IMG/VR virus record: IMGVR_UViG_3300005537_000001
Location: 124,001 to 188,000 of that record
Strand: one strand, 5' to 3'
Length of the DNA stretch: 64,000 nt
Made by a program: the position numbers and the translations under genes. The notes beneath the pieces are model-generated. The model was not told the DNA's origin, did not search any database, and was given only the letters and a program-made list of their open reading frames with translations. Shown here one piece after another: positions 199-40,104 of the stretch. How positions within the stretch are numbered: the first letter of the stretch is position 1; each line of letters begins with the position of its first letter.

Positions 199-272
199 TC
201 GCCCGTAGCTGAGTGGTTTAGCGAGGAACTCTAAATTCCGGTACGTGGGTTCGATTCCCATCGGGCGATCCA
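199..272 (+). tRNA. Amber suppressor tRNA (anticodon CUA), probably Gln-type body
   Basis: Acceptor TCGCCCG/CGGGCGA, D arm GCT/AGC, anticodon loop CT-CTA-AA in GGAA/TTCC stem, GGTTCGATTCC T arm, T73 then CCA; U1-A72 and U73 as in this phage's tRNA-Gln(CTG). Confidence 0.9.
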
Positions 273-10127: not shown

Positions 10128-10424
10128 ATGCTTGCCGAATACACATCAATCGAGCGTAGATCACACATCCGCCACCGCGCCCGAACAGACGTTCGCATTC
10201 GAAAATTAAGCGGTCAATCCAAGATGTGCCGAGCTGTTAACCTATCAGCTCAGGGCGTTGGCATCCAAACAGATGACATGGGGCTTCTCAAGGGTGAGAT
10301 AGTCCAGCTTGTTTTCGCTATCAACCTCGGCTCCGTTAGCAAGCTTCACCGTCGAACTGCTCGAGTTGTTCACGTCCGCTCCGGTGTTACCGGATTTTTC
10401 ATGGACGCCTTCGCGGGTAAATGA
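10128..10424 (+). CDS. PilZ-domain (c-di-GMP-binding) protein
   Basis: ERRSHIR (RxxxR) and NLSAQG ([D/N]xSxxG) motifs; early promoter upstream. Confidence 0.8.
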   Translation: MLAEYTSIERRSHIRHRARTDVRIRKLSGQSKMCRAVNLSAQGVGIQTDDMGLLKGEIVQLVFAINLGSVSKLHRRTARVVHVRSGVTGFFMDAFAGK

Positions 10425-11449
10425 TGAAACCAAAGCTTCTAACCAGGGGAGAATTTCGCGACAGCGTCTTTCGCCGCGATGGATCCAAGTGCATCTTCTG
10501 CGAACAGCCCGCGGCAGATGCTCACCACATTCTTGAACGTCGCCTATGGCCAGACGGTGGATACTATCTGGAGAACGGTGCCAGCGTTTGCCCTCAACAC
10601 CACCTCGAGTGCGAGCGAACAACCATCAGCGTTGAAGAGGTTAGGCACGCGGCCAAAATCACTAAGATCTGGGTTCCTCCGCATCTGTACGATGATCACA
10701 TCTACGATAAGTGGGGTAACCCCATCTTGGAAGATGGTCGCCGAGGTCGGGGTGAGCTATTTTTTGACGAGTCGGTGCAAAAGGCTTTGAAAGAAGGAGG
10801 TGTTCTTGATCTCTTTACCCCCTATGTCAAGTATCCGCGCACACTCCATCTCCCTTGGTCTCCTGGATTTACTGATGACGACAAGGTTATGGAAGAACTT
10901 GATGCATTCAAGGACATGATAGTTGTCGTCACCGAGAAGATGGATGGTGAGAATACCACCATGTACCGCGATCACATCCACGCGCGCAGCATCGACAGCA
11001 GAGGTGGAGAAGATAGGGCATGGGTGAAGCAGTTTCACGCCCGCATCGCCCATGAGATACCAGAAGGTTGGCGCATCTGTGGTGAGAACCTTTGGGCAGA
11101 GCATTCCATCCACTATGACAATCTTAGATCGTATTTCTACGGCTTCAGCATCTGGAATGAAAAGAACGTTTGCCTTTCGTGGCATGATACGGTAGAATGG
11201 TTTTACCTTCTTGGTATCGAGCCCATGCCGGTGCTTTACAACGATTTTTGGGATACCGCAAACATCCGCAACCTTGAAAGATATCTGAAGTGGGAGAACA
11301 ACGAAGGTTACATCGTTCGAGTCGCTCACAGCTTTCCATATTCTCAATTCCGCAGAAGCGTTGCAAAGTTTGTCCGCAAGGGTCACGTCCAGACAACGAA
11401 GCACTGGCGAGCTGGGCGATCATTTATTCAAAATGGACTTGCACGATGA
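10421..11449 (+). CDS. HNH domain fused to ATP-dependent RNA ligase
   Basis: CIFC..DAHHI...NGASVCPQHH; KYPRT, EKMDGEN (motif I), EGYIVR, KFVR. Confidence 0.85.
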   Translation: MMKPKLLTRGEFRDSVFRRDGSKCIFCEQPAADAHHILERRLWPDGGYYLENGASVCPQHHLECERTTISVEEVRHAAKITKIWVPPHLYDDHIYDKWGNPILEDGRRGRGELFFDESVQKALKEGGVLDLFTPYVKYPRTLHLPWSPGFTDDDKVMEELDAFKDMIVVVTEKMDGENTTMYRDHIHARSIDSRGGEDRAWVKQFHARIAHEIPEGWRICGENLWAEHSIHYDNLRSYFYGFSIWNEKNVCLSWHDTVEWFYLLGIEPMPVLYNDFWDTANIRNLERYLKWENNEGYIVRVAHSFPYSQFRRSVAKFVRKGHVQTTKHWRAGRSFIQNGLAR

Positions 11450-14243: not shown

Positions 14244-15344
14244 ATGAAACTACACGAGATACATAAGGCTAAAACAGAGGTTTCAGCTGAGCAGCGCAAG
14301 CTGTACAATGCTATCGTCAAAGCGATAGCCAAGACGGTTAAGATGGCAAATTCAAACGCTCTCGGTCAAGCTGGTCCAACCGACATAAATCCAGAATACC
14401 TAACCCGAATTGGCAATGGTCTAAAGGCGGCAGCTCTCGGTGGTAAGGATGATTTCGAGAAGGATTGGTCGAAGCTTGCTAGTAGGCACACAGATTTATT
14501 TGCTCATCTCGCTGATGAAATTTTCTCAGAATTAGGTGTAGACACATACGATGAGATGATGACTAAGCTTAAGCAGCTTAAAGAGGCAGATGAGACCGAC
14601 GTTGACGCACCAGAAGCTAAGGATGATGAGCTTGAGGCTGATAAGAACGCAGCCGAAGCAACCCCCTCCCCACAGGAGGACGTCGGTTCTGTCTCTCAAG
14701 CCGAAGGTTTCAAGAAATCCAAGAAGGAGATGTTTGCTTTTGGAGCAACTCGACCAGTAACACTTCTTACCAAAGACGAGAAAATCGGCGGCATGGACAT
14801 TACGCTTCAATACGTTATCAACCCAAAGACCGGAGCGTGGAGCTTGCGAGCCGCGCTGCAGGGACAGAGCGCCGAAGATATGGTTGAGTTTGAAACTGGA
14901 GAGGATCCAACCTCACTCATCAAGAATCTTAAGAAAAAGAAAAAGATTACTCCTCACCAGCTTGTAGACAACCTTAATCCACCTGCCGATAAAATCGGTG
15001 CCAAGAAGCCACCAGCTCCAGTTCCAACATCAACTCCAGAAAAACCAGAAGATGACGAGGAAGAATCAATTGATGAGGCTGTCAAGTCCAAGTTGTCCAA
15101 GGATATGATTTCGAAGGAGCTTCGTCGTGGTATCATGATGGCATGGAACGCTATTGGTCATGATCTCCTCGACGCGCTTGGTGAAGATGCAGACAATGAA
15201 TTGATTATGGATTCGGTTGCGACCACTGACATGATGCATTCCTATGGATCACCAGAAGCGTCAAAGGAACTTCGTAAACTATTTGACGATTACGGAGTGG
15301 CGGCCGTTCATAAGCTTCTTTCTAAAGAAATTCACCTCAACTAA
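14244..15344 (+). CDS. Probable virion internal (poly)protein
   Basis: MKLHEI N-terminus; internal LKE/IDE sites; acidic linkers. Confidence 0.7.
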   Translation: MKLHEIHKAKTEVSAEQRKLYNAIVKAIAKTVKMANSNALGQAGPTDINPEYLTRIGNGLKAAALGGKDDFEKDWSKLASRHTDLFAHLADEIFSELGVDTYDEMMTKLKQLKEADETDVDAPEAKDDELEADKNAAEATPSPQEDVGSVSQAEGFKKSKKEMFAFGATRPVTLLTKDEKIGGMDITLQYVINPKTGAWSLRAALQGQSAEDMVEFETGEDPTSLIKNLKKKKKITPHQLVDNLNPPADKIGAKKPPAPVPTSTPEKPEDDEEESIDEAVKSKLSKDMISKELRRGIMMAWNAIGHDLLDALGEDADNELIMDSVATTDMMHSYGSPEASKELRKLFDDYGVAAVHKLLSKEIHLN

Positions 15345-15360
15345 CCTGTGAAAAATAACT

Positions 15361-15450
15361 GTTTACTTTTGATTTGCTTTGTGGTATTATTTTCTTTCTC
15401 GATTAGAACTGTTAGTTCTGATTCCAAAGTTTTTTGTTTCCGTATAAATA
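15361..15450 (+). promoter_or_regulatory. Early (GTTTAC...TATTAT) and late (TATAAATA) promoters of the tRNA operon
   Basis: GTTTAC at 15361, TGG-TATTAT ending 15390; TATAAATA 15443-15450. Confidence 0.7.
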
Positions 15451-15497
15451 GTTTCGCGCTGAGCAGTCAGCGATAACCTAACTGAGGATTATTTTTA

Positions 15498-15629
15498 ATG
15501 TTCACCTCTTCATTCAAACACATTATGGTCAAGACCTGGCAAAATTGCCAGCGTACCATCGTGCGCTTTGAAAGAAAGCAACATGATAATACGCAAATTG
15601 CCCTCAGTGACGAGTACGAAGGTTTGTAA
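15498..15629 (+). CDS. Leader peptide (43 aa) of a putative attenuator upstream of the tRNA array
   Basis: GAGG SD; MFTSSFKHIMVKTWQNCQRTIVRFERKQHDNTQIALSDEYEGL*; 3' end overlaps the antiterminator. Confidence 0.75.
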   Translation: MFTSSFKHIMVKTWQNCQRTIVRFERKQHDNTQIALSDEYEGL

Positions 15630-15688
15630 AAGTACAAACAAAAGTTTCGAAAACTGAGGGAGCCAAAAAGCTCCCTCAGTTCGTTTTT
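15601..15688 (+). terminator. Terminator (15652-15688) with competing antiterminator (15601-15660)
   Basis: AACTGAGGGAGC-caaaaa-GCTCCCTCAGTT-CGTTTTT; alternative CCCTCAGT(15601)/ACTGAGGG(15653) enclosing CGAAG/TTTCG and GTTTGTA/TACAAAC. Confidence 0.8.
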
Positions 15689-15897
15689 GGAGACGGCTCC
15701 AACCCAGCTTCAAGGCTTGCTGGGTGATCAACCAAGTCGGACCGCGATGATACTGGCGAGTAGTCTTTAGCCAGCGGAGTGCGATAAAGGCAAGAATTTG
15801 GTAAAAGAGATTCCCATCGGGAATCTCAAAACTGAACGCGGCGCAACCCTTTCTGGGCTCTACGCCGCCGTTCTTCTGATTATGAGAATCCATAGGA

Positions 15898-15968
15898 GTG
15901 GCTGTAGCATAAAGGTAATGCCTCACGCTGTGACCGTGACCAAGCCGGGTCAGTACCGGTCAGTCACC
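15898..15968 (+). tRNA. tRNA-His(GTG), atypical T loop, no encoded CCA
   Basis: TCACG-CT GTG AC-CGTGA. Confidence 0.7.
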
Positions 15969-15984
15969 CCTCTGGATTTTCTAT

Positions 15985-16061
15985 GGTGTTTATGGTGTAG
16001 TGGTCTTGCATCCAAGGTTGTGATCCTTGTGGTGAGGGTTCGATCCCCTCTAAACACCCCA
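15985..16061 (+). tRNA. tRNA-His(GTG) with G-1
   Basis: CAAGG-TT GTG AT-CCTTG; CCA. Confidence 0.9.
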
Positions 16062-16067
16062 ATTTTA

Positions 16068-16141
16068 GCCCGCTTAGGATAGTGGTAGTCTGACTGTTTC
16101 GTAAGCAGTAGGCCGGTGTTCGATTCACCGCGTGGGCACCA
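16068..16141 (+). tRNA. tRNA-Thr(CGT)
   Basis: ACTGT-TT CGT AA-GCAGT; CCA. Confidence 0.85.
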
Positions 16142-16144
16142 AGT

Positions 16145-16240
16145 TTGAGTGTAATGGCGACTTATCTTGGTTCGATTCCAAGTTTAGAATGGTTCTGTGA
16201 CGACGGTCAAGTCGAAGGGTTCGATTCCCTCTCCACTCAA
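16145..16240 (+). ncRNA. tRNA-like RNA with two T-loop hairpins
   Basis: TTGAGTG/CACTCAA closing stem; CTTGG-TTCGATT-CCAAG and AGGG-TTCGATT-CCCT; CGACTT/AAGTCG. Confidence 0.5.
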
Positions 16241-16249
16241 TTCACGTTT

Positions 16250-16324
16250 GAACCGTTCGATTTCTGGTGAGATCACCAGCCTTTCAAGCTGGCCAGATGG
16301 GATCGTTCCCCATACGGTTCGCCA
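16250..16324 (+). tRNA. tRNA-Glu(TTC)
   Basis: CCAGC-CT TTC AA-GCTGG; CCA. Confidence 0.9.
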
Positions 16325-16328
16325 ATTT

Positions 16329-16416
16329 CAGGAATTAGCTCATTGGAGATACGAGAGAGCACTCGGTTGCCGAAAGCACCGAGAGGTTGTTGGTTCGATT
16401 CCAACATTCCTGACCA
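16329..16416 (+). ncRNA. tRNA-Pro-like body with anticodon loop replaced by an extended CGAAA-capped hairpin
   Basis: CAGGAAT/ATTCCTG-A-CCA; CTCGG-T-TGC-CGAAA-GCA-CCGAG. Confidence 0.65.
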
Positions 16417-16422
16417 AATTAC

Positions 16423-16497
16423 GGGTTGTTAGCTCAGAGGCAGAGCATCCGGTTCTTACCCGGACGGTCGAGATTTCAAAATTCTCACAACCCACCA
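16423..16497 (+). tRNA. tRNA-Lys(CTT)
   Basis: TCCGG-TT CTT AC-CCGGA; CCA. Confidence 0.9.
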
Positions 16498-16501
16498 ATA
16501 T

Positions 16502-16572
16502 TCCCTTGTAGCTTAAACAAAGCCCGGCATTTACGGCCGGAGATGGAGGTGAAAGACCTTCCCAGGGAGCCA
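16502..16572 (+). ncRNA. tRNA-like RNA with loop ATTTACG (nominal UUA anticodon, non-canonical)
   Basis: TCCCTTG/CCAGGGA-G-CCA; CCGGC-ATTTACG-GCCGG; T arm GGAGG-TGAAAGA-CCTTC. Confidence 0.6.
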
Positions 16573-16577
16573 AATAT

Positions 16578-16648
16578 TCCCTGGTAGTTTAACTACTAGA
16601 ATAGCGCGTATACGCGTGGTGGAGGTGAAAGACCTTCCCAGGGAGCCA
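16578..16648 (+). ncRNA. tRNA-like RNA with 4-nt anticodon loop; 3' half identical to 16502-16572
   Basis: TCCCTGG/CCAGGGA-G-CCA; GCGCG-TATA-CGCGT. Confidence 0.6.
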
Positions 16649-16654
16649 AATTTT

Positions 16655-16730
16655 GGGATCGTAGCTCAGAGGCGAGAGCAGGGCCCTTTTAAGGCCAAGG
16701 TCGAGATTTCGAAATTCTCCGGTCCTACCA
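16655..16730 (+). tRNA. tRNA-Lys(TTT)
   Basis: GGCC-CT TTT AA-GGCC; CCA. Confidence 0.9.
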
Positions 16731-16737
16731 AACAAAT

Positions 16738-16863
16738 GGTGATGTAGTGTAATGGCAGCACGCGAAAACATCGATCGCAAATTTTGTTGTGACCCAACCG
16801 TCAGTGATTGGTTATCCACTCATAAAGGCGAAGATTACGTTCGAATCGTAACAATCACCACCA
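16738..16863 (+). ncRNA. tRNA/Y-RNA hybrid (circularly permuted YrlA-like) ending in CCA
   Basis: GGTGAT/ATCACC-A-CCA, D arm, TTACG-TTCGAAT-CGTAA T arm; anticodon arm replaced by ATCGATCGC-AAAT-TTTGTTG...CAACCGTCA-GTGATTGGT-TATC. Confidence 0.65.
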
Positions 16864-16870
16864 AACAAAT

Positions 16871-16946
16871 GCCGCTTAAGCTAATCTAGTGAAAGCGTGG
16901 GCCTGAAGAGCCCGATAGCTCGGAGCGTAACCGAGAGGCGGCACCA
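16871..16946 (+). tRNA. tRNA-Phe(GAA)
   Basis: TGGGC-CT GAA GA-GCCCG; CCA. Confidence 0.85.
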
Positions 16947-16954
16947 AATTTTAT

Positions 16955-17030
16955 TCCGGGTTAGCTCAGCGGTAGTAGCCCCTCGCTGTTAACGAGGTTG
17001 TCGGGAGTTCGATCCTCTCACCCGGAGCCA
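16955..17030 (+). tRNA. tRNA-Asn(GTT)
   Basis: CCTCG-CT GTT AA-CGAGG; CCA. Confidence 0.9.
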
Positions 17031-17037
17031 ATTCAAC

Positions 17038-17111
17038 GGTCCCTTGGTATATGGGTATTACACTGCGCTGTCTACGCGGTAAAGCGAGTCCGAGTCTCGC
17101 AGGGATCGCCA
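17038..17111 (+). tRNA. tRNA-Asp(GTC)
   Basis: CTGCG-CT GTC TA-CGCGG; CCA. Confidence 0.9.
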
Positions 17112-17269
17112 CTATTAACGGATCTTACGTTGACCGCCAAACAGCGCGCATAACCAGCAATACGCTCGTCCAACCGCAAGCTGCTTCTTGCAGCCGGGGT
17201 TTTGACAATTAACACGTGGCTTCGGTTTATCCAACCCAAGGGCGCGACGGTTTGCTGCCCAATAAGCCA

Positions 17270-17935
17270 TTACGAAACAACAGTCGCGTAAAATGCAAGC
17301 GCCGCTTCTAGCGTAGCAAATACCATCGTTGAATCTACTTGAGCGGCAGTTCTTGCTGGATTCAAGTAAGAAATCAAATATGATACGGTGGTTACGGTTG
17401 GAGACGCTTGAGCCATTGACACCGACGTTACGACTCCCTTACCGACGCCAAACGTGGCAGCTTGTACAACGAATACGTTGGCGGTAGGAAGGAACGTGTA
17501 GAGAACGGTATTGGATTCTGTGAATACGATTGGATCAGTTCCAATGATAATGGCTCCACCGCTACCAGTTCCAGCCATCGTCACTAGCCAGCTTGAGTTA
17601 CCATTAACGGTGCCGTTGACTACGAAGATAAAGATGCCAAGCTTAACTTGAGCTGCAACATGGTTGTCAAAGTCAACCGCGCGGGTAAGAACCCAGCTAG
17701 CTGAAACTGAACCAGGATTGGTGACAACGTAGACACCATTTTGAGTAGGATCAAGCTGGTTGGTTAGGAGAATGCGATCATTCGCGCTTGCCGCGAATCC
17801 ATCAACAACCAGCGCCGTTTGCGTGGATGAGGTTAGGGTAGCTCCAACACCAAGAGTGCCGTTAGCGTATGTACCTGCAAGGTTGACTGGTGATGCCGCG
17901 TGAGCAGAATCTAGAGTGCCGGTTACTGTCAACAT
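17270..17935 (-). CDS. Tail-fibre-associated structural protein, antisense within the tRNA array
   Basis: RILLTNQLDPTQNGVY..WVLTRA domain shared with 43610-48169; AGGAG SD and ATAAATA late promoter on minus strand. Confidence 0.8.
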   Translation of the reverse strand: MLTVTGTLDSAHAASPVNLAGTYANGTLGVGATLTSSTQTALVVDGFAASANDRILLTNQLDPTQNGVYVVTNPGSVSASWVLTRAVDFDNHVAAQVKLGIFIFVVNGTVNGNSSWLVTMAGTGSGGAIIIGTDPIVFTESNTVLYTFLPTANVFVVQAATFGVGKGVVTSVSMAQASPTVTTVSYLISYLNPARTAAQVDSTMVFATLEAALAFYATVVS

Positions 17936-17975
17936 TTTATTCTCCTAAATTCGTTTAAAGACAATTCTTATTTAT

Positions 17976-18050
17976 GCTCCATTAGACTTCTGGTGAGGTT
18001 ACCGCTCTCTCAAAGCGGATAGGTGGGATCGTAACCCACATGGAGCGCCA
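17976..18050 (+). tRNA. tRNA-Glu(CTC)
   Basis: CCGCT-CT CTC AA-AGCGG; CCA. Confidence 0.9.
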
Positions 18051-18056
18051 CCAAAT

Positions 18057-18137
18057 TTGACAACCGACTCGCGACCGAGGGTTATCCATCCAAGATAAAC
18101 ATCCTCAACCGCAATGCCGCAAGGCCTTTGTTGTCAA
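18057..18137 (+). ncRNA. Y-RNA-like small RNA
   Basis: TTGACAAC-C-GA / TT-GTTGTCAA bulged-C terminal helix; GGTTATCC motif. Confidence 0.55.
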
Positions 18138-18146
18138 TTAGATTAT

Positions 18147-18220
18147 ACCACCATAGTTCAATGGTAGAACGTCTGGCCGATTACCGGAATACGCGGGTCC
18201 GATTCCTGCTGGTGGTACCA
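18147..18220 (+). tRNA. tRNA-Ile(GAT), C33
   Basis: TCTGG-CC GAT TA-CCGGA; CCA. Confidence 0.8.
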
Positions 18221-18225
18221 AATTT

Positions 18226-18310
18226 TAGGATATTGCGTGAGACTGCCACGGTATGCTGCAACCTCGTAAGAGGCATCGCTCGCTAGGTTCGACTCCTAGG
18301 TATCCTATCA
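18226..18310 (+). ncRNA. tRNA-Cys-like RNA with a hairpin inserted in the anticodon arm
   Basis: TAGGATA/TATCCTA; CT GCA AC followed by CCTC-GTAA-GAGG; CTAGG-TTCGACT-CCTAG. Confidence 0.5.
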
Positions 18311-18314
18311 AATT

Positions 18315-18386
18315 CGTGGCGTGGCAGAACGGTCATGCACCGGTTTCATAAGCCGTCCCAAGCAGGTTCAACTCCTGCCGCCACGA
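18315..18386 (+). tRNA. tRNA with CAT anticodon (Met or Ile2)
   Basis: CGTGGCG/CGCCACG; TT CAT AA loop. Confidence 0.8.
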
Positions 18387-18426
18387 CACAAAGTGGATTT
18401 TCTATAAGTAGAGATAAGGAGGACAA

Positions 18427-19218
18427 ATGTTCTATTATCTCTACAAAATCACGAATAACGTGAATGGAAAAATCTACGTCGGGTATCATAAAACCTCTAA
18501 CATAGATGATGGTTACATGGGATCCGGGAAGATTATCAAGCACGCAATTAAAAAGCACGGCTTAGATAACTTTACAAAAGTCATACTTGAGTATTTTGAG
18601 AATGCAGAAGCTATGTATGCGCGAGAGAAAGAAATTGTAGATGATGATTTTCTAGCTCGACCCGATGTCTATAACCTAAGACGCGGAGGAAACGGTGGGT
18701 TTGATCATATCAATAAAAATCGAACCGCCGAGGAATGGTCTCGATTAGGAAAATTGAGACGAGCAAAATCTAAAGGAAACACAGGTAAAATATTTAGTGT
18801 TGAATGGAAAGCTAATATTAGCAAATCGTTAAAAGGTAGTGATAATTCAGCAGCAGTTGAAGCGGCCAGATCCAAAAAATCTAACCATAAACGAAAACTT
18901 ACGATGAGAAAACGTAAGCATCAACAAGGTGAAAATAATTCCAATTTTGGAAAAATTTGGATAACTGATGGAATAAAAGCTGTCAAAATTAGAAAAGATC
19001 AGATACATGAATATCTTGAACGTGGATATATGTTGGGTAGAACAATTAAAATTCCAAAAATAAAACACATTACTAAAGCTGAACTCTACAATGATATTCA
19101 ACCTAAATGCAGAAATCCAAAATGTAATAACAGCTTGTCGCTTATGCAATTTGTCAAAAATATCAAATCGTGTTGTAAAGCATGCGCTAATTCAACACGT
19201 TATTCGGGGATCGTCTAA
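18427..19218 (+). mobile_element. GIY-YIG homing endonuclease (Seg-like) inserted in the tRNA array
   Basis: YLYKITNNVNGKIYVG..GYMGSG..YNL; AT-rich; stop overlaps tRNA-Gln. Confidence 0.9.
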
Positions 19219-19278
19219 CTGGCAGGACATTGAGCTTTGAACTCAGAAATCTTGGATCGTACCCAAGTCCCCGAACCA
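19204..19278 (+). tRNA. tRNA-Gln(TTG)
   Basis: TTGAG-CT TTG AA-CTCAG; CCA. Confidence 0.9.
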
Positions 19279-19285
19279 AATTATC

Positions 19286-19379
19286 GCCGAGGTAGCTCAG
19301 AGCTGGTCAAAACCCAGCGCCGGTAGAGCGGGTGCCCAACAGCACCGCGTCGTTGGTTCGAATCCAACCCGAGGCGCCA
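19286..19379 (+). ncRNA. tRNA-like RNA: D-loop hairpin insert, 6-nt anticodon loop, GA/GA mismatches in acceptor stem
   Basis: GCCGAGG/CCGAGGC-G-CCA; GCTGG..CCAGC insert; GGTGC-CCAACA-GCACC. Confidence 0.65.
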
Positions 19380-19386
19380 AGTTTAT

Positions 19387-19462
19387 TCACCGATAGTTTA
19401 ACTGGCAAAACCTTCGTCTCTGAAACGAAAGAGTCCTGGTTCGATCCCAGGTCGGTGATCCA
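19387..19462 (+). tRNA. tRNA-Gln(CTG)
   Basis: TTCGT-CT CTG AA-ACGAA; CCA. Confidence 0.9.
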
Positions 19463-19468
19463 AATTAT

Positions 19469-19544
19469 GCCCTCGTAGCCTAAAGGATAGGTGCTACGCT
19501 TCGAACGTAGAAAGATGCGGGTTCGAGTCCTGCCGAGGGTACCA
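19469..19544 (+). tRNA. tRNA-Arg(TCG)
   Basis: CTACG-CT TCG AA-CGTAG; CCA. Confidence 0.9.
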
Positions 19545-19551
19545 CCAAAAT

Positions 19552-19651
19552 GCCGAAGTAGCTTAGAGTGGTGCGCAAAATAAATCCACGTCGGTAGAGC
19601 GTCCACCCGGAAACGTGGAAGACGATGGTTCGAATCCATTCTGAGGCACCA
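19552..19651 (+). ncRNA. tRNA-like RNA paralogous to 19286-19379 (D-loop insert, 8-nt anticodon loop)
   Basis: GCCGAAG/CTGAGGC-A-CCA; GTGG..CCAC insert; TCCAC-CCGGAAAC-GTGGA. Confidence 0.65.
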
Positions 19652-19655
19652 ATTT

Positions 19656-19731
19656 CTCCCTATAGTGAAGCTGGATATCACGAGGTCGTGCGAAGGCCTA
19701 AGCAGAGGTTCGACTCCTCTTAGGGAGGCCA
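19656..19731 (+). tRNA. tRNA-Arg(GCG)
   Basis: AGGTC-GT GCG AA-GGCCT; CCA. Confidence 0.85.
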
Positions 19732-19750
19732 CATTCAAGTAAATAGCTGC

Positions 19751-20263
19751 ATGAAAGCATACGAACTATTCGAGGATACAAGAATATACTGGCACGCCAG
19801 CCAAAGCGATCTGCCCCTTGGTAAGGTGATAGCGTGGAAGGCTAAGCAGAAGCACCACTTTGGTGATTATGAGAAACTTCTGGAATACTTCCGTCCAGCT
19901 GGAGCTTTAAGCAGATTGACATCTTTCTTTCTTGCAAATACGCGCCAAGGTGCTGAGCAATTTGGTAGAGGGAATACCTATAAGGTTCAAGCCGTTGGTA
20001 AAACAAGCTCCCACTACATTGGCTGGATAGGTCTTCTTACTGGATTGCCCATGATGGTTGGGTATAAATCCGGGCACGGATACACGGTGAAAGTTTCTAG
20101 GGAGCTTTCAAATCCAGATGTCAAATACATCTGTGAGCAATATTGGTCTGGCAAGAAGCCATCGACAAAAGATTTCAAGCGATTTGATGAAGAGCCAGAT
20201 GGTGAGAGCTTCATTCAAGAAACTCTTGCGCCAAAGATAATCTGTCTCAAACATTTTGAATAA
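19751..20263 (+). CDS. Probable virion protein with ADP-ribosyltransferase-like (Arr/DUF2441-like) fold
   Basis: MKAYELFE start; YWHAS..L..G, LEYFRP...SRLTSFF, YW, distal E. Confidence 0.5.
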   Translation: MKAYELFEDTRIYWHASQSDLPLGKVIAWKAKQKHHFGDYEKLLEYFRPAGALSRLTSFFLANTRQGAEQFGRGNTYKVQAVGKTSSHYIGWIGLLTGLPMMVGYKSGHGYTVKVSRELSNPDVKYICEQYWSGKKPSTKDFKRFDEEPDGESFIQETLAPKIICLKHFE

Positions 20264-20264
20264 C

Positions 20265-20338
20265 GTCCCGTTCGTCCAATGATAAGACGACAAGTTGCAA
20301 CCTTGTAGACGCTGGTTTGATTCCGGCACGGGACTCCA
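20265..20338 (+). tRNA. tRNA-Cys(GCA)
   Basis: ACAAG-TT GCA AC-CTTGT; T73-CCA. Confidence 0.9.
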
Positions 20339-20344
20339 AATTAT

Positions 20345-20422
20345 TGGCACTTAGCGTTCAGGGTGAGTGCGCCGCACTGTTAATGCGGAACGAGACTGGT
20401 TCGATCCCAGTAGTGCCAGCCA
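20345..20422 (+). tRNA. tRNA-Asn(GTT), second copy
   Basis: CCGCA-CT GTT AA-TGCGG; CCA. Confidence 0.9.
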
Positions 20423-20429
20423 AATTAAT

Positions 20430-20506
20430 ATGGGTGTGTCAGGTAATTGGCTAACCGGCTGCGCTCCAAACGCTTCGATGGGGTTCGAATCCCTCCACCC
20501 ATGCCA
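20430..20506 (+). tRNA. tRNA-Trp(CCA) with only 3 canonical anticodon-stem pairs
   Basis: ATGGGTG/CACCCAT-G-CCA; CTGCG-CT CCA AA-CGCTT. Confidence 0.75.
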
Positions 20507-20542
20507 AATATCTCTAAATAACTCATCGACCTGGAGTACGCT

Positions 20543-21205
20543 ATGAAGATTTACGAGTTACTAGAAGCAAGTGATCCTAATTCACCGTCTAATCAGCTGC
20601 GCAAGTTGAAAGGTAACAAGGATGAACTCATCAAGCACATTCTTACTAAAGTTAAGGATGGTCGCTACGATTATGCTAAAAAGGTTGTAGCGCTCGCTAG
20701 AGACAAAGGAATAGATTATCCCGAATTTGATTCTGTTGAGAAGAGCATAGGTAGAGGCGTAGCAGGAAATGCAACCCATGAACCAAGCTACAATGAAAAG
20801 AGCAGATCACTTCAGGGTAGAGTAAAAGATTGGCACAAGCTTATGGGCGTCAGCGATAAAGATGTCGCCACCGCGCACCGTGAAATCAGCAGTTCGAAGC
20901 AGTATTTGGATCTCATACACGCGGGAATGACGGATATATCCACCCCACAGCAAAAGAAGAATGGCACCTTCAACTTTAGCGTTAAAGACGAACCGGGTTC
21001 ATATCAAGTGTATGGCAACGGTCAGCTCCGTCACATGAAGCCGTTAATGGGGTATGGTGGATATGGTCGACTAAAACATCAGCTGGTAGCTTCGCTTAGA
21101 CCAACTATTATCGCGGGTGATCCGGTAAAATCGCTGCTCAAAACATACGAGGCGGCGATGGAAAAGATGCTCGCCTACTTCAAGCGCGCAAGATCGCCAA
21201 AATAA
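20543..21205 (+). CDS. Probable virion internal protein (paralog of 28564-29238)
   Basis: MKIYELLEA; shared GDPVKS..KTY and GxDxPEF..I/VxKS motifs. Confidence 0.75.
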   Translation: MKIYELLEASDPNSPSNQLRKLKGNKDELIKHILTKVKDGRYDYAKKVVALARDKGIDYPEFDSVEKSIGRGVAGNATHEPSYNEKSRSLQGRVKDWHKLMGVSDKDVATAHREISSSKQYLDLIHAGMTDISTPQQKKNGTFNFSVKDEPGSYQVYGNGQLRHMKPLMGYGGYGRLKHQLVASLRPTIIAGDPVKSLLKTYEAAMEKMLAYFKRARSPK

Positions 21206-21209
21206 TTTT

Positions 21210-21282
21210 GCCCTCGCCGGTGGATACGGCCACAGGTCTTCTAAACCAGTAGGTGGAGGTTCGATTCCTCTCGAGGGCGCCA
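21210..21282 (+). tRNA. tRNA-Arg(TCT), reduced D arm
   Basis: GCCCTCG/CGAGGGC; CT TCT AA; CCA. Confidence 0.8.
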
Positions 21283-21287
21283 TTTAA

Positions 21288-21362
21288 GCCGTTGTCGTAT
21301 ATTGGTAATACAGATCCTTGGTAAGGATCAAAACGAGTGTTCGATTCACTCCTGCGGCACCA
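21288..21362 (+). tRNA. tRNA-Thr(GGT)
   Basis: GATCC-TT GGT AA-GGATC; CCA. Confidence 0.9.
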
Positions 21363-21381
21363 ACAAGTAAATAAAAGTACT

Positions 21382-21804
21382 ATGAAAATACTTCTACATC
21401 CAGATCCAACTCTTAGCAAGATAAGCCATCCAATCGAAGAGATTAATGACGGCACTATCGAGCTAATCAACAACATGTTCATTACCATGAACGAAGCTGG
21501 TGGTATCGGTCTGTCGGCAATTCAGGTAGGTGTTGACAAGCAGCTGTTCATCATGAGCATCAACGGTGCCAGCTACATCTTCATCAATCCGGTTATCACG
21601 TGGAGATCTCCAGAAACTCAAACGATCAACGAAGGCTGTCTCAGTCTTCCAGGTACGTTCGTCGACATGACCCGCAGCGCTAAGATTATAGTGAACGCGT
21701 TTGGGGTTGACGGTAAGATATTTGAGGTTGAAGCAACCGGTCTCCACGCCGCGTGCATTCAGCATGAAATGGATCATCTAAGCGGAAAGACGCTGCTCTC
21801 CTAA
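21382..21804 (+). CDS. def: Peptide deformylase
   Basis: GIGLSAIQVG, EGCLS, QHEMDH. Confidence 0.95.
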   Translation: MKILLHPDPTLSKISHPIEEINDGTIELINNMFITMNEAGGIGLSAIQVGVDKQLFIMSINGASYIFINPVITWRSPETQTINEGCLSLPGTFVDMTRSAKIIVNAFGVDGKIFEVEATGLHAACIQHEMDHLSGKTLLS

Positions 21805-21869
21805 TTCAGTGGTAGAATGCCTGCATGACACGCAGGATGTGGTAGGTCCGATTCCTACGGAGAGCACCA
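21795..21869 (+). tRNA. tRNA-Val(GAC), overlapping the def stop codon
   Basis: CCTGC-AT GAC AC-GCAGG; CCA. Confidence 0.85.
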
Positions 21870-21926: not shown

Positions 21927-22118
21927 ATGAAAGTAGCAGAATTACTTGAACGCGATTATGTTTCGGATGTGTGGAGCGCCAAACCACTTAAGCTCCTTAA
22001 CAGGTACAGCAAGAAGGATTTGAGCAAGGCGCTCAGTAGAAAGCCGTCAGCGCAGACGGTAGTGATAAGAAACACCGCCACCGGTGACATCGTTGGCAAG
22101 CGAACTATCATACAATGA
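21927..22118 (+). CDS. Small probable virion internal protein
   Basis: MKVAELLE; late-type ATAAATA upstream. Confidence 0.6.
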   Translation: MKVAELLERDYVSDVWSAKPLKLLNRYSKKDLSKALSRKPSAQTVVIRNTATGDIVGKRTIIQ

Positions 22119-22456
22119 AACTTCAAGATTTATTCGAGTCAAAATACGCATCGGTTCCTCTATCACAGATACAACCGACAGAAGATTGGCAGGTACCTAT
22201 TGATGATAGGCTTTTAGCATATGTCGATGGTGAAAAGAATACCGTGCCGCGAATTTATGATGACATCAAAAATGGTATTGGAATAAAGCATGCTCTGGAA
22301 GTTTCTAGGATAGCAGATACTTCTAAGAGCTGGAAAAAGACATTTCCACCGAAGCCTGGAAAGGTATATTATTTGCATAATGGCCACCACAGATATGCGG
22401 CGGCTGTTTTAGCAAAATTGAAAAATGTTAGGGTTAGAATAGGAAAAGGAGCATAA
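22115..22456 (+). CDS. ParB/Srx-like domain protein with capsid-targeting-like N-terminus
   Basis: MKLQDLFE; YLHNGHHRYAAA. Confidence 0.7.
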   Translation: MKLQDLFESKYASVPLSQIQPTEDWQVPIDDRLLAYVDGEKNTVPRIYDDIKNGIGIKHALEVSRIADTSKSWKKTFPPKPGKVYYLHNGHHRYAAAVLAKLKNVRVRIGKGA

Positions 22457-22457
22457 G

Positions 22458-23120
22458 ATGAAGCGCATTATAGAAATTAAATCTGCCGAAGGCGGCACAG
22501 ATAGCAAGCTCTTCGCGCAAGATCTTGCCAACGCATACGTAAAGTATCTCACCCGAGTCGGCTGACTCCACCGCCGCATCGATTCGCTGACAATCGAGGT
22601 TGATGGACAGGATCTCTCAGCGCTTCACCAAGAAGCTGGTGGTCATCGAATCCAGCGGGTTCCACCAACCGAACGTTCTGGTCGCACCCACACCTCTACC
22701 GTTACCGTCGCCATCATCAACCCGCAAGAAGCTAAGCTGATTGAGTTCAACGAACGTGACTTCAGGATAGAGTGGTACTCTGGTACCGGTTCTGGTGGAC
22801 AACACCGTAACAAGCACCAAAATTCTTGCCGAATATTTCATACCCCAACTGGGACGGTTGCCACCGCACAATGTAGGAGCCGAGAAAATTCCTTGAAGGA
22901 AGCGAAGGTAAATATCCTTGAACGTCTAAACGCTCAGCTCTCCGGAGCAGCCCATCAAGCACTATCAATGGATAGGAAAACTCAGATGGGTTCCGGAGAG
23001 CGGGGTGACAAGATCCGCACCTACCGCTTCCAAGACAATATCGTCAAGGATCACAACACCGGAAAGCAGGCGCAAACCGACAAGGTGATGGCTGGAAACT
23101 TTCAACTGCTTTGGAGATAA
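22458..23120 (+). CDS. RF1-type peptide chain release factor (lacking domain 1) with in-frame TGA at codon 36
   Basis: MKRIIEIKSAEGGTDSKLFAQDL..Y..RVG*LH...EAGGHRIQRVPPTE.SGRTHTS...GSGGQHRNK...GSGERGDKIRTY; PxT and GGQ motifs; TGA 22563-22565. Confidence 0.9.
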
Positions 23121-25100: not shown

Positions 25101-25203
25101 AGAGATGTCGTATAATGGTATTACCCCGGTCTCCTAAGCACTTTCCTAAAGAGAGTTTTTAGGAAAACCGATGACGGGAGTTCGATTCTCTCCATCTCTG
25201 CCA
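25101..25203 (+). tRNA. tRNA-Trp-like gene with a 29-nt insertion in the anticodon loop
   Basis: AGAGATG/CATCTCT-G-CCA; removing 25135-25163 gives CCGGT-CT CCA AA-ACCGA. Confidence 0.7.
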
Positions 25204-31328: not shown

Positions 31329-31718
31329 AAAATTTCTTTGCTCAACGTGATCACCAAAGTTCCTCCACCGGAGCAGCTTGGTTAACAATCATGTACGTTA
31401 GTGGATGGGTGTTGTTACCCCTGCAGGGTTCAGCACGCGCAAACGGTGTCAAGGCTGTTCCACCAAATTCTTGAATGGTTGCTGGTTAGAGAAAATCAGA
31501 TAGTGCTGACTGACCGTCAGATAGTTGCTGGTTAGAATGACCAGATAGATTACCGCATAGTCGAATCAAGCGGTGTAGGTAGGCACAATGGGAATAGTCC
31601 CATCGTGTAATTTGTTCGAAACCTTCGGGTTAGACTCATGATTTTCGGATCATGTAAACTATCGAAGTTCCCAACTGCAACATTTGTTGGGGAATTTTGT
31701 TGATCACGTTGAAATTTT
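31329..31718 (+). ncRNA. Giant (~390 nt) Y-RNA-like structured RNA immediately upstream of Ro60
   Basis: TCAACGTGATCA.CAAAGTTCCTC / GGGGAATTTTG.TGATCACGTTGA long-range stem; CAC-C-GGA/TTTGTT helix; GCAG(C)TTGG/CCAACTGC; internal UUCG hairpins. Confidence 0.65.
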
Positions 31719-31758
31719 GCCGTCGCTAGCAACGATAGCCGCTATAGGAGATCATATC

Positions 31759-39379: not shown

Positions 39380-39392
39380 CCCAGGTTGACAG

Positions 39393-39947
39393 ATGTTAGG
39401 GCAATATTACTGCTACATATTTCGTGATCCCAAAACCGAGATTCCTAGATACGTTGGCAAGGGAGTGAATGATAGAGTTTGGACTCACATAGATTATCCA
39501 TCTAACACTCGCACTGATAGGATGCTAGTGAAGAGACATAGGGAAGGATACTCTTGTGTACCCGAAATTATCTACTGCAAGAATGAGGAACAGGCTTTCA
39601 GTTTAGAGATGTGGTTCATTTGGAAATATGGGCGTGAAGATCAAGGTCGAGGTACACTTTTCAATCTCACAGATGGTGGAGAAGGTTTGACAGGTATCTC
39701 AGAAGAAACTCGCCAGAAGATGTCAATAGCTAAAACTAGATATCTCACTGGTAGAAAACACGATGAAGCAAGACGCAAGAGACAAGGGCAGAGGATGAAG
39801 GGTATTCCGAATGTCGCAGCGAGCAAGAAGCTTCAAAAGCGTTGCACTGTAGATGGTGAGAATATCTATCCATCTGTTAGAGATTTAGTGGCAGCACTAG
39901 GTCATGGTAAAAATGGAGCACGATCTCCAAGTTTGAGGTTCATATGA
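39393..39947 (+). mobile_element. GIY-YIG homing endonuclease with NUMOD3-like motif
   Basis: YCYIFRDP..RYVGKG..R..H; NLTDGGEG..SEETRQKMS. Confidence 0.85.
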
Positions 39948-40104
39948 ATAATGAAGTAACTAAAACAGCGATTGCGGGTCTGGCCGCATCCATCAACCGC
40001 GTAGCGGAACAACTAGCCGTACAAAATAATCAGCAGGTTTTGCAGAACAATCTTCTAAGACGAATCGCTGACGCTCTTGATCAACAGAATTCAACGGTGC
40101 GCTG

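What the first reader, a model, noticed from the sequence alone, without database searches (positions are those of the whole stretch)
15498..15688. Pan-tRNA-sensing attenuator controlling the phage tRNA array
Seen directly: a 43-codon leader whose stop lies inside an antiterminator hairpin (15601-15660) that is mutually exclusive with a terminator (15652-15688). Codons 6-34 encode only F,K,H,I,M,V,T,W,Q,N,C,R,E,D, exactly the 14 amino acids of the canonical tRNAs in the array. Isoacceptors match too (ACC/ACG for Thr GGT/CGT; AAA/AAG; CAA/CAG; CGC,CGT/AGA; GTC). Ala, Leu, Tyr, Gly (no tRNA in the array) appear only within the antiterminator, Pro never, and Ser (codons 4, 5, 37) is the one exception. 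Established logic (trp/his attenuation): stalling upstream lets the antiterminator form, while a ribosome reaching the stop melts it and transcription terminates. Inference: the phage transcribes its tRNAs only when any of those host tRNAs is depleted or cleaved, a generalised tRNA-damage sensor I do not know to have been described.
Basis: partly seen in the sequence, partly recalled or inferred. Interest (0 to 1): 0.93.

Follow-up and report, generated by a model that had tools for sequence, protein, structure and literature searches.

The report
Leader-peptide attenuator gating a phage tRNA array
A giant phage places a short translated "test message", written almost only in the amino acids whose tRNAs it encodes, in front of a stop/go RNA switch upstream of its tRNA genes; this looks like a previously undescribed way for a virus to match tRNA production to tRNA supply or damage.

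Summary
Window 15498-15629 is a 43-codon ORF (ATG to TAA). Its stop codon lies inside a hairpin (15601-15608 pairs with 15653-15660) that shares eight bases with a strong intrinsic terminator (15652-15688). The tRNA array (15898-21869) starts 210 nt downstream.

I found the same module directly upstream of tRNA arrays in 14 distinct related jumbo-phage contigs. A profile search found 44 diverged leader peptides.
- The ORF is always open, ends in TAA, and its indels are in frame.
- The three RNA segments (2, 3, 4) co-vary: compensatory changes occur at 6 of 11 antiterminator positions and 8 of 12 terminator positions.
- In a 26-codon zone around an invariant Trp, only 2% of residues fall outside the 14 amino acids served by the array. 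Phage proteins have 38%.
- That zone ends about four codons (one ribosome half-footprint) before segment 2.
- Most leaders contain every one of the 14.
- Leader content partly follows array content: Ala appears in both in one phage, and Cys is absent from both in several. Arg, Asn and Ser are counter-examples.

Best reading: a ribosome-mediated transcription attenuator that reads the supply of the tRNAs the array encodes. This is a new variant of a known mechanism, not found in the literature searched, and untested experimentally.

The parts
15362..15390 (+). sigma-70-like promoter (TTTACT, 17 nt, TATTAT, with TG before the second hexamer)
   Evidence: The class TTTAC-N18-TATAAT is enriched in the window, 8 found against 1.0 expected, all on the + strand. 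The same promoter type sits upstream of the leader in L012, L023 and L037.
15440..15450 (+). conserved CCGTATAAATA box, about 50 nt before the ATG; a candidate second promoter (same octamer as the T4 late promoter, from my own knowledge)
   Evidence: Identical in window, L003, L004, L020, L037 and L054; near-identical in L012, L023 and L045. TATAAATA occurs 6 times against 1.3 expected.
15457..15472 (+). 5' hairpin of the leader transcript (CGCTGA gcag TCAGCG)
   Evidence: A hairpin at this position, with a different sequence, is present in L012 and L023.
15481..15488 (+). segment 1 (ACTGAGG) overlapping the Shine-Dalgarno GAGGA; it can pair with segment 2 (candidate anti-antiterminator)
   Evidence: Pairs with 15601-15608 in the long fold. 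CACTGAG is present before the ATG in L003, L004, L017 and L045, and a co-varying AGGATCAG is present in L054. It is not seen in L012, L020, L022, L037, L050 or L052.
15498..15629 (+). leader ORF, 43 codons plus TAA
   Evidence: Open in every homologue, always ending in TAA. Frame 0 has 0 stops; frame +2 has 2-6. All indels are multiples of 3. 44 homologous peptides were found.
15513..15590 (+). sensing zone, codons 6-31: only the 14 amino acids served by the array, and all 14 are present
15536..15551 (+). conserved hairpin inside the ORF (CTGGCA aaat TGCCAG), followed by the near-invariant block TCGTGCGCTTTGA (to 15571); candidate RNA polymerase pause hairpin
   Evidence: Present in all homologues, with loop length changing by 3 nt. 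The closing pair changes C-G to U-A in L023, L047, L050 and L054.
15601..15608 (+). segment 2, the 5' arm of the antiterminator (codons 35-38)
15622..15639 (+). inner hairpin of the antiterminator, with the TAA stop (15627-15629) at its top
   Evidence: Every homologue has an inner hairpin with the stop in its upper part, each with a different sequence.
15653..15660 (+). segment 3, shared by the antiterminator (with segment 2) and the terminator (with segment 4)
15652..15688 (+). intrinsic terminator: 12-bp stem, 6-nt loop, T-run
   Evidence: Conserved, with compensatory changes at 8 of 12 positions.
15739..15806 (+). core of a conserved structured RNA lying between the terminator and the first tRNA (whole element 15690-15897); function unknown
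   Evidence: No Rfam match at E up to 10.
15898..21869 (+). tRNA array: about 22 canonical tRNAs for 14 amino acids plus several non-canonical ones, interspersed with ORFs

Best explanation
This is a ribosome-mediated transcription attenuator of the trp/his/thr kind, placed in front of a jumbo phage's tRNA gene array.

How it works (inferred):
- Host-type RNA polymerase starts at the promoter or promoters upstream, and a ribosome translates the 40-43-codon leader.
- If the ribosome runs through to the TAA, it sits between segments 2 and 3. They cannot pair, so segment 3 pairs with segment 4 and transcription stops before the tRNA genes.
- If the ribosome stalls anywhere in the roughly 26-codon sensing zone because a charged tRNA is missing, segment 2 stays free. 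It pairs with segment 3 as soon as that is made, the terminator cannot form, and polymerase reads into the array.
- The sensing zone is written almost only in the amino acids whose tRNAs the array encodes, and contains nearly all of them. The switch therefore reports the total usable pool (host plus phage) of exactly those tRNAs. It gives induction when any one is depleted or cleaved, and negative feedback once the phage's own tRNAs suffice.
- Codons for other amino acids are confined to positions where a stall would not induce: the first few codons, and the last four or so codons before and inside segment 2.

Shown here: the anatomy, its conservation and covariation, the preserved ORF, the composition rule and where it applies. 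Inferred: translation of the leader, coupling to transcription, stalling, and the physiological trigger.
For: 1. Anatomy in the window.

2. Location. The module lies directly upstream of a tRNA array in all 14 distinct homologous loci, plus L046, whose nhmmer match also precedes an array. These are the window, L003, L004, L012, L017, L020, L022, L023, L037, L045, L047, L050, L052 and L054.

3. RNA switch. The 2:3 helix is paired at offsets 0-7 in 14 of 14 sequences, with both-sided changes at 6 of 11 positions. The 3:4 helix has 93% of cells paired, with both-sided changes at 8 of 12 positions. Changes in the shared segment 3 are matched in both partners, for example CCCTCAGT/ACTGAGGG, CCCTGGTCTT/AAGACCAGGG, CCCTTAGT/ACTAAGGG and CCCTGGAC/GTCCAGGG.

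4. Geometry. In the ten loci measured, the stop codon lies 14-19 nt after segment 2 and 18-32 nt before segment 3.

5. Translation.
- ATG and TAA are conserved, there is no frame-0 stop, and indels are in frame.
- Changes are spread evenly over codon positions (31/34/39), with many non-synonymous differences. The peptide sequence is therefore free, while the ORF and its alphabet are kept.
- A GAGGA sits 9 nt before the ATG, and many of the phage's genes show AGGAG-type sites.

6. Alphabet.
- 9 of 293 residues fall outside the set in ten leaders, against 38% in phage proteins.
- No comparable 30-residue window exists among 23,370.
- Of 103 column-residue states in 29 variable columns, only 7 are outside the set, where mutational and BLOSUM nulls expect 40%.
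- In 44 diverged family members, 26 of 1138 residues (2.3%) lie outside the set in the zone from Trp-8 to Trp+17.
- The outside fraction is 18% before the zone, 2% inside it, 32% in the next four codons and 50% afterwards. The zone's 3' edge is about one ribosome half-footprint from segment 2.

7. Completeness. 30 of 44 leaders contain all 14 amino acids, 13 lack only Cys and 1 lacks only Ile. The chance of having all 14 in 33 draws from the set is 0.085.

8. Tracking.
- The only Ala-rich leader (P0044: three GCA and one GCT) precedes the only array with a canonical tRNA-Ala(UGC), which has G3:U70, A73 and an encoded CCA.
- Leaders without Cys go with arrays without tRNA-Cys (L022 and L052 complete; L037, L050 and L054 partial). 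Leaders with Cys go with arrays that have it.

9. Codon level. The phage's own array can read 31/31 leader codons in L022, 33/33 in L003, 31/32 in L004 and 31/34 in the window. In phage genes the figure is 49-66%.

10. Context. Sigma-70-like promoters are present, so host core polymerase and intrinsic termination are plausible. RNA ligase, Ro60, peptide deformylase and a release-factor-like gene lie nearby.
Against: There is no experimental evidence of any kind; all of these phages are uncultured.

Counter-examples to tracking:
- The L052 leader has 4 Arg codons, but no tRNA-Arg was called in its apparently complete array.
- The L012 leader has 4 Asn codons, but no canonical tRNA-Asn was found; there is only an odd 100-nt tRNA.
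- GTG in the window has no cognate tRNA in the array.
- Ser accounts for 15 of the 26 exceptions, and no array has a tRNA-Ser.
- L023 has a tRNA-Gly(CCC) but no Gly codon in its sensing zone.

Other weaknesses:
- The Ala and Cys associations may each rest on a single evolutionary event.
- Most amino acids are represented by one or two codons, not runs. Only severe depletion would stall the ribosome long enough.
- The partner that would sequester segment 2 when there is no translation (segment 1) is visible in only about half of the loci.
- T-tracts are weak in L003, L004 and L023.
- Internal promoters in the array cannot be excluded.
- I could not check whether tRNAs for Ala, Gly, Leu, Pro, Ser and Tyr lie elsewhere in the 368-kb genome.
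Confidence: 0.7

Rival explanations
1. The element is a generic gauge of translation capacity. It is a real attenuator, but it reads only whether ribosomes translate promptly at all (ribosome availability, host shut-off, initiation), not which tRNAs are available. The restricted alphabet would then be a by-product.
For: Any attenuator of this geometry responds to global slowing of translation. Each amino acid is represented by only one to a few codons. Arg, Asn and Ser are mismatched with array content.
Against: This does not explain several findings:
- The zone excludes Leu but not Ile, Val or Met; Ser but not Thr; and Tyr but not Phe or Trp. No chemical logic separates these groups; only the tRNA set does.
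- The exclusion is position-specific.
- Nearly all 14 amino acids are kept in each leader.
- Ala and Cys follow array content.
Confidence: 0.12
2. The ORF encodes a small functional protein, or a regulatory arrest peptide of the TnaC/SecM kind. On this view the peptide sequence matters, not its codons.
For: A few residues are near-invariant (Trp-Gln, Val-Arg-Phe-Glu). Gene callers did predict it as a gene in several assemblies.
Against: - The conserved residues coincide with nucleotide-level conservation that includes third codon positions, and with a hairpin.
- The rest of the peptide changes freely, with 447 non-synonymous against 93 synonymous pairwise codon differences.
- The C-terminal third is dictated by the RNA stems.
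- There is no Pfam-like fold in a peptide of 40 aa.
- An arrest peptide would not need a 14-letter alphabet.
Confidence: 0.06
3. The element is an RNA-only switch. The alternative hairpins are set by a protein, a small molecule or a tRNA binding the leader RNA (T-box- or riboswitch-like), and the ORF is incidental.
For: The leader folds into a long conserved hairpin, with strong nucleotide conservation in its centre.
Against: - Frame 0 is open in every homologue, while the other frames carry stops.
- Indels are in frame, the stop is always TAA and at a fixed structural position.
- The alphabet rule is defined in the reading frame.
- No Rfam family, T-box included, matches at E up to 10.
Confidence: 0.05
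4. This is an ordinary terminator ending the upstream transcription unit, plus a chance ORF. The array would be driven by its own promoters.
For: The terminator follows the 366-aa gene by about 300 nt, and promoter-like sites exist inside the array.
Against: In L003, L004 and L017 the upstream gene is different (PilZ-like), yet the module is the same. Segment 2 co-varies with segment 3. A conserved promoter box lies between the upstream gene and the leader.
Confidence: 0.03

Closest known systems
Leader-peptide attenuators of enterobacterial amino-acid operons (trpL, hisL, pheL; multivalent thrL, ilvL, ivbL)
   Same: A short translated leader, an antiterminator and an intrinsic terminator that share a strand, a stop codon placed so that a terminating ribosome blocks the antiterminator, and regulatory codons upstream. 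thr and ilv already sense two or three amino acids.
   Different: - The regulated genes are tRNAs, not biosynthetic enzymes.
- The leader is longer (40-43 codons) and has no codon runs; instead it carries one to a few codons for each of 13-15 amino acids.
- It excludes the remaining amino acids from a defined zone.
- It is phage-encoded.
- The 1:2 element lies at the Shine-Dalgarno site rather than inside the ORF, and is not universal.
pheST (phenylalanyl-tRNA synthetase) attenuator
   Same: A leader-peptide attenuator that controls a component of the translation apparatus according to tRNA charging (from my own knowledge).
   Different: It senses a single amino acid, is a host gene, and regulates a protein-coding target.
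T-box riboswitches
   Same: Transcription antitermination that responds to the state of a tRNA and controls translation-related genes.
   Different: A T-box binds one specific uncharged tRNA directly and needs no ribosome. No T-box match was found here, and the reading frame matters here.
RtcR-controlled rtcBA RNA repair operon (induced by damaged tRNAs; PMC7790460, PMC10159003)
   Same: A regulatory device that responds to tRNA damage and switches on a remedy. The window also encodes an RNA ligase and Ro60.
   Different: There the sensor is a protein (the CARF domain of RtcR) binding tRNA fragments at a sigma-54 promoter. Here the proposed sensor is the translating ribosome.
Phage tRNAs as counter-defence to tRNA-cleaving immunity (PMC10264068; PARIS AriB, PMC12409363)
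   Same: It supplies a rationale for why a phage would need tRNAs on demand.
   Different: Those studies concern the tRNAs themselves. They describe no regulatory leader.

Membership tests
Ribosome-mediated (leader-peptide) transcription attenuator | Short ORF with a start codon and ribosome-binding site between the promoter and the regulated genes | tested here: met
   ORF 15498-15629 with GAGGA 9 nt upstream. It is open, in frame and ends in TAA in all homologues.
Ribosome-mediated (leader-peptide) transcription attenuator | Intrinsic terminator between the leader and the regulated genes | tested here: met
   Terminator at 15652-15688. It is conserved, with compensatory changes at 8 of 12 positions. 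T-tracts are weaker in L003, L004 and L023.
Ribosome-mediated (leader-peptide) transcription attenuator | Antiterminator mutually exclusive with the terminator, whose 5' arm is covered or blocked by a ribosome at the end of the leader | tested here: met
   The 2:3 helix is paired in 14 of 14 sequences at offsets 0-7, with compensatory changes at 6 positions, and shares 4-11 nt with the terminator. In the ten loci measured, the stop lies 14-19 nt after segment 2.
Ribosome-mediated (leader-peptide) transcription attenuator | Regulatory codons in the leader that correspond to the product of the regulated genes | tested here: met
   The sensing zone uses the array's 14 amino acids at 98% and contains nearly all of them. 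This takes a new form: an alphabet instead of codon runs.
Ribosome-mediated (leader-peptide) transcription attenuator | Pause or anti-antiterminator structure (1:2) that synchronises ribosome and polymerase and gives termination without translation | tested here: inconclusive
   The conserved ORF hairpin (15536-15551) could be a pause hairpin. The segment complementary to segment 2 at the Shine-Dalgarno site is seen in about half of the loci.
Ribosome-mediated (leader-peptide) transcription attenuator | Read-through depends on leader translation and on the supply of the cognate charged tRNA | not testable with these tools
   This needs a reporter, Term-seq or an in-vitro coupled assay.
T-box riboswitch | Stem I specifier loop and the T-box sequence that pairs with the tRNA acceptor end | tested here: not met
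   No Rfam match in 15350-15990 at E up to 10.
Nascent-peptide arrest regulators (TnaC, SecM, Erm leaders) | A conserved arrest motif in the peptide; regulation through Rho or through translation of the next gene | tested here: not met
   The peptide is poorly conserved outside the stretches constrained at the RNA level. The downstream element is an intrinsic terminator, and the regulated genes are RNAs.

The most novel reading that the evidence does not exclude
A 'pangram' leader: the first attenuator known to control tRNA genes. A single short ORF carries at least one codon for each amino acid served by the downstream array and excludes all others from the zone where a stalled ribosome induces read-through. 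This would let a jumbo phage raise transcription of its whole tRNA array when any one of about 14 tRNA species is depleted or cleaved (for example by anticodon nucleases), and shut it down once supply is restored. Leader alphabet and array content would co-evolve.
Probability: 0.6. Interest if true: 0.92.

Novelty: new variant of a known kind. Interest (0 to 1): 0.88.

Why it matters
How phages regulate their tRNA genes is largely unknown, and why they carry them is still debated (codon compensation or escape from tRNA-targeting defence).

A conserved switch whose sensor is written in the array's own amino-acid alphabet would show that tRNA supply is actively monitored during infection. It would extend classical attenuation from one to three amino acids to about fourteen, and from enzyme operons to RNA genes.

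It would also give a compact, portable genetic sensor for tRNA depletion or damage. The positional rule found here (exclusion ending about four codons before the antiterminator) is a direct, testable prediction from ribosome footprint geometry.

Tried and rejected
- blastn of the region and of 12 kb around it against GenBank phages: no match.
- Word-based protein search with the leader alone: no candidates.
- Metagenome scan with the leader alignment, and four viral-contig pattern scans: only the three known contig types. A relaxed pattern then added L019 to L022.
- GTDB scan: 19 of 20 hits were chance matches in unrelated genes. One real hit, L037, sits in a 'Pirellula' MAG.
- Rfam: nothing but tRNAs.
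- MAFFT plus RNAalifold on the antiterminator put one clade out of register by one column and saw only 5 pairs. I therefore counted pairs in a register anchored on the invariant CCCU/AGGG.
- L021, a leader followed by only five tRNAs, looked like a counter-example. That contig maps circularly onto L012 and is probably a mis-assembly or rearrangement.
- The 138-codon ORF on the minus strand (15510-15926) was rejected, because relatives differ there by indels that are not multiples of 3.
- P0020, a 1054-aa repeat protein, is a spurious profile hit.
- The element at window 18237-18307 is not the Val-CAC tRNA found at that position in relatives.
- Nucleotide composition as the cause of the alphabet: mono-nucleotide and position-specific models give P between 2e-7 and 3e-3 per leader.
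- A second copy of the module: none in the window or in any locus held.
Full report
**1. What is in the window**

On the + strand, after the 366-aa gene that ends at 15344, the features run in this order:
- A sigma-70-like promoter at 15362-15390.
- A conserved box, CCGTATAAATA, at 15440-15450.
- A small 5' hairpin at 15457-15472.
- ACTGAGG at 15481-15487, overlapping a GAGGA Shine-Dalgarno site.
- An ORF of 43 codons, from ATG 15498 to TAA 15627-15629.
- CCCTCAGT at 15601-15608, which is codons 35-38.
- ACTGAGGG at 15653-15660.
- A 12-bp terminator hairpin at 15652-15681, followed by CGTTTTTGG.

Truncated before the 3' arm of the terminator, the RNA folds so that 15601-15608 pairs with 15653-15660. 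That helix encloses a structured insert, and the stop codon sits at the top of an inner hairpin (-25.5 kcal/mol, z = -5.2). With the 3' arm present, the terminator wins. CCCTCAGT occurs four times in 64 kb, and three of those are in this element.

The tRNA array follows at 15898-21869.

**2. The tRNA set**

ARAGORN at its default setting gives 20 tRNAs in the array, for 12 amino acids.
- tRNA-Phe(GAA) at 16871-16946 is found by Rfam (40 bits) and by relaxed ARAGORN.
- tRNA-Trp(CCA) at 20430-20506 is found by relaxed ARAGORN. It is syntenic and alignable with canonical Trp tRNAs of relatives.

Several further tRNA-like genes are non-canonical (19286-19376, 19552-19648 and others).

At codon level, 31 of the first 34 leader codons can be read by the array. 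The exceptions are TCT, TCA and GTG; the window has only Val-GAC.

**3. Relatives**

GenBank phages hold nothing similar. I reached relatives through:
- the neighbouring 366-aa protein,
- degenerate DNA patterns,
- a profile search with the leader alignment, followed by look-ups.

This gave the same module in 14 distinct sequence types: the window (a 368-kb IMG/VR contig), L003, L004, L012, L017, L020, L022, L023, L037, L045, L047, L050, L052 and L054. A further match in L046 was not dissected. In every case the module lies directly upstream of a tRNA array, although the gene upstream of it differs. In L003, L004 and L017 that gene is PilZ-like.

The profile search returned 44 peptides of 33-62 aa from clusters at 50% identity or less, so this is a family and not a one-off. 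Contig sizes of 331-368 kb and the gene content indicate jumbo phages.

**4. The RNA switch is under selection**

I anchored the register on the invariant CCCU of segment 2 and AGGG of segment 3.
- The 2:3 helix is paired at offsets 0-7 in all 14 sequences. Both-sided compensatory changes occur at 6 of 11 positions.
- The 3:4 terminator has 93% of cells paired, with compensatory changes at 8 of 12 positions.

Segment 3 is shared, so a change in it has to be matched in both partners, and it is. Examples of segment 2 with segment 3 are CCCTCAGT/ACTGAGGG, CCCTGGTCTT/AAGACCAGGG, CCCTGGTTCT/AGAACCAGGG, CCCTTAGT/ACTAAGGG, CCCTGGAC/GTCCAGGG and CCCCTGGTCCT/AGGACCAGGGG.

In the ten loci measured, the stop codon always lies 14-19 nt after segment 2 and 18-32 nt before segment 3, in the upper part of an inner hairpin whose sequence differs between clades. 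A terminating ribosome would therefore sit between the two arms and prevent them from pairing. That step is an inference from established footprint sizes.

**5. The ORF is real**

In each of the nine leaders analysed:
- Frame 0 has no stop, while frame +2 has 2-6.
- The stop is always TAA.
- All indels inside the ORF are multiples of three, including one in the loop of the internal hairpin.
- Substitutions are spread evenly over codon positions (31/34/39), and non-synonymous differences are abundant (447 against 93).

So the peptide sequence is not conserved as such, but the frame, the length and the alphabet are. Many of the phage's genes carry AGGAG-type ribosome-binding sites.

The invariant Trp-Gln and (Cys/Arg)-Gln codons form a conserved hairpin, CUGGCA-loop-UGCCAG. 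Its closing pair changes C-G to U-A in four loci. Together with the near-invariant block that follows, this is a candidate pause element. That is inference only.

**6. The alphabet**

Phage proteins in the window and its relatives are 62% 'set-14' residues. Among 23,370 thirty-residue windows, none has fewer than two residues outside the set, and the longest pure run is 23.

In the first ten leaders, 9 of 293 residues before segment 2 are outside the set. Composition-matched nulls give P between 2e-7 and 3e-3 per leader.

During divergence, 103 column-residue states arose in 29 variable columns, and only 7 are outside the set. A single-nucleotide mutational null and a BLOSUM62 null both predict 40%.

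In the 44 family members, the zone from Trp-8 to Trp+17 holds 26 outside residues out of 1138 (2.3%). These are 15 Ser, 5 Ala, 3 Leu, 2 Gly, 1 Pro and 0 Tyr. 28 peptides have none.

The profile along the peptide is sharp:
- 18% outside the set in the first few codons,
- 2% inside the zone,
- 32% in the next four codons,
- 50% thereafter.

The 3' edge of the zone lies about four codons before segment 2. That is the distance at which a stalled ribosome would begin to cover segment 2 and could no longer induce read-through. This match in geometry is the strongest mechanistic argument I can make without an experiment.

No physico-chemical rule separates the two groups. Ile, Val and Met are in but Leu is out; Thr is in but Ser is out; Phe and Trp are in but Tyr is out. 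No simple nucleotide rule does either: ACN codons are common, while GCN, CCN and TCN are excluded.

**7. Completeness and tracking**

30 of 44 leaders contain all 14 amino acids, 13 lack only Cys and one lacks only Ile. The chance of having all 14 in 33 draws from the set is 0.085.

Leader content follows array content in two cases.

Ala:
- P0044 is the only Ala-rich leader, with three GCA codons and one GCT.
- Its array (L047) has a canonical tRNA-Ala(UGC) with G3:U70, A73 and an encoded CCA.
- No such tRNA is present in the dozen other arrays examined.

Cys:
- Leaders without Cys precede arrays without tRNA-Cys. L022 and L052 are complete arrays; L037, L050 and L054 are partial.
- Leaders with Cys precede arrays that have it: the window, L003, L004, L012 and L023.

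Counter-examples:
- Arg codons in the L052 leader, with no tRNA-Arg called.
- Asn codons in the L012 leader, with no canonical tRNA-Asn.
- Ser is never matched by a tRNA-Ser.
- GTG in the window has no cognate tRNA.
- L023 has a tRNA-Gly(CCC) with no Gly codon in its zone.

Many array members are non-canonical and hard to assign, and each association may reflect a single evolutionary event. Tracking is therefore suggestive, not proven.

**8. Mechanism and rivals**

The best explanation is a classical ribosome-mediated attenuator whose regulatory codons form the alphabet of the regulated tRNA array. It would act both as a depletion or damage sensor and as feedback from the phage's own tRNAs. 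My confidence is about 0.7.

Open points:
- What happens with no translation at all. A segment at the Shine-Dalgarno site that is complementary to segment 2 is clear in about half of the loci.
- Whether single codons stall a ribosome for long enough.
- Whether internal promoters bypass the switch.

Four rivals each fail on specific evidence, set out in the Rival explanations section: a generic translation gauge, a functional or arrest peptide, an RNA-only switch, and an ordinary terminator with a chance ORF.

**9. Comparison with what is known, and novelty**

All sequence-level defining features of leader-peptide attenuators are met. The pause or 1:2 element is inconclusive, and functional dependence on translation cannot be tested here. 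T-box membership is excluded.

Seven full-text searches found no description of a leader peptide or attenuator upstream of phage tRNA genes or of any tRNA gene cluster. A jumbo-phage comparative review does not mention one.

I rate it a new variant of a known kind: the known mechanism, with a new target class (tRNA genes), a new sensor design (a near-complete exclusive alphabet) and a viral owner.

**10. Context**

Nearby genes all relate to translation or RNA maintenance:
- an RNA ligase (10421-11449),
- Ro60/TROVE (31684-33393),
- peptide deformylase (21337-21804),
- a release-factor-like gene with an in-frame TGA (22458-23120),
- two CTA-anticodon tRNAs (199, 2682).

This fits a phage that maintains translation under attack, but it does not bear directly on the mechanism.

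Noticed in passing
window 15690-15897 (core 15739-15806); also L003 14155-14355, L012 13485-13746, L022, L037, L047, L054: A conserved structured RNA lies between the terminator and the first tRNA. It has the motif GACCGC, then a stem-loop whose stem co-varies around a conserved loop (GAGTAGTCTT or a variant), then GAGTGCGA and AGG. It has no Rfam match and its function is unknown. It belongs to the attenuator-controlled transcript. A Ro60 gene in the same window makes a Y-RNA-like role worth testing.
   Followed up: partly
window 199-272 and 2682-2759; L018 478 and 2013; L021 2912 and 4963; start of L023: Two tRNAs with anticodon CTA (amber-suppressor type, labelled Pyl by ARAGORN) are conserved across the clade. 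TAG ends only 6 of 50 long ORFs in the window. Every leader analysed ends in TAA.
   Followed up: no
window 22458-23120: A release-factor-like gene of about 220 codons, with a GGQ motif and no domain 1. It is interrupted by a single in-frame TGA at 22563-22565 and continues in the same frame. This could be read-through, recoding or autoregulation.
   Followed up: partly
window 31684-33393, 10421-11449, 37421-43613: A Ro60/TROVE-vWA protein, an RNA ligase (PF09414, also next to the array in relatives) and a PrkA-DUF444-SpoVR trio are encoded in a phage genome.
   Followed up: partly
window 19286-19376, 19552-19648, 25101-25200; L012 16885-16984; 84-95-nt Lys and Asn tRNAs in L003, L004, L012, L037: Many tRNA genes carry insertions of 10-30 nt in the D arm, the anticodon arm or the variable region, or have 6- or 8-nt anticodon loops. 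Their identities could not be assigned. They may be decoys or nuclease-resistant variants.
   Followed up: partly
window 18427-19218 and 21337-21804: A GIY-YIG (SegE-like) homing endonuclease and a peptide deformylase are embedded in or next to the tRNA array.
   Followed up: partly
window 19751-20263, 20543-21205, 21927-22118, 22115-22456, 14244-15344: Several ORFs in and around the array begin with similar N-termini (MK.YEL.E / MKL.E). They look like a paralogous family, and Pfam gives no match for the three I scanned (14244-15344, 19751-20263, 20543-21205).
   Followed up: no
window, + strand: 10075, 15362, 26856, 29679, 55285 and others; TATAAATA at 586, 6255, 8510, 15443, 34196: Two promoter-like motif classes are enriched on the coding strand: TTTAC-N18-TATAAT (8 found against 1.0 expected) and TATAAATA (6 against 1.3). 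The second is identical to the T4 late-promoter octamer (from my own knowledge).
   Followed up: partly
L021 (IMGVR_UViG_3300025387_000169, 12.5 kb): The contig maps onto L012 as a circle that jumps from the fifth tRNA of the array to the CTA-tRNA region. It is likely a mis-assembly across tRNA repeats, or a rearranged or defective genome.
   Followed up: partly
L037 (JAUMAI010000012.1, binned as Pirellula sp., coverage about 1): A phage-like contig carrying the leader and at least 18 tRNAs sits inside a planctomycete MAG. This is either a hint to the host or a binning error.
   Followed up: no
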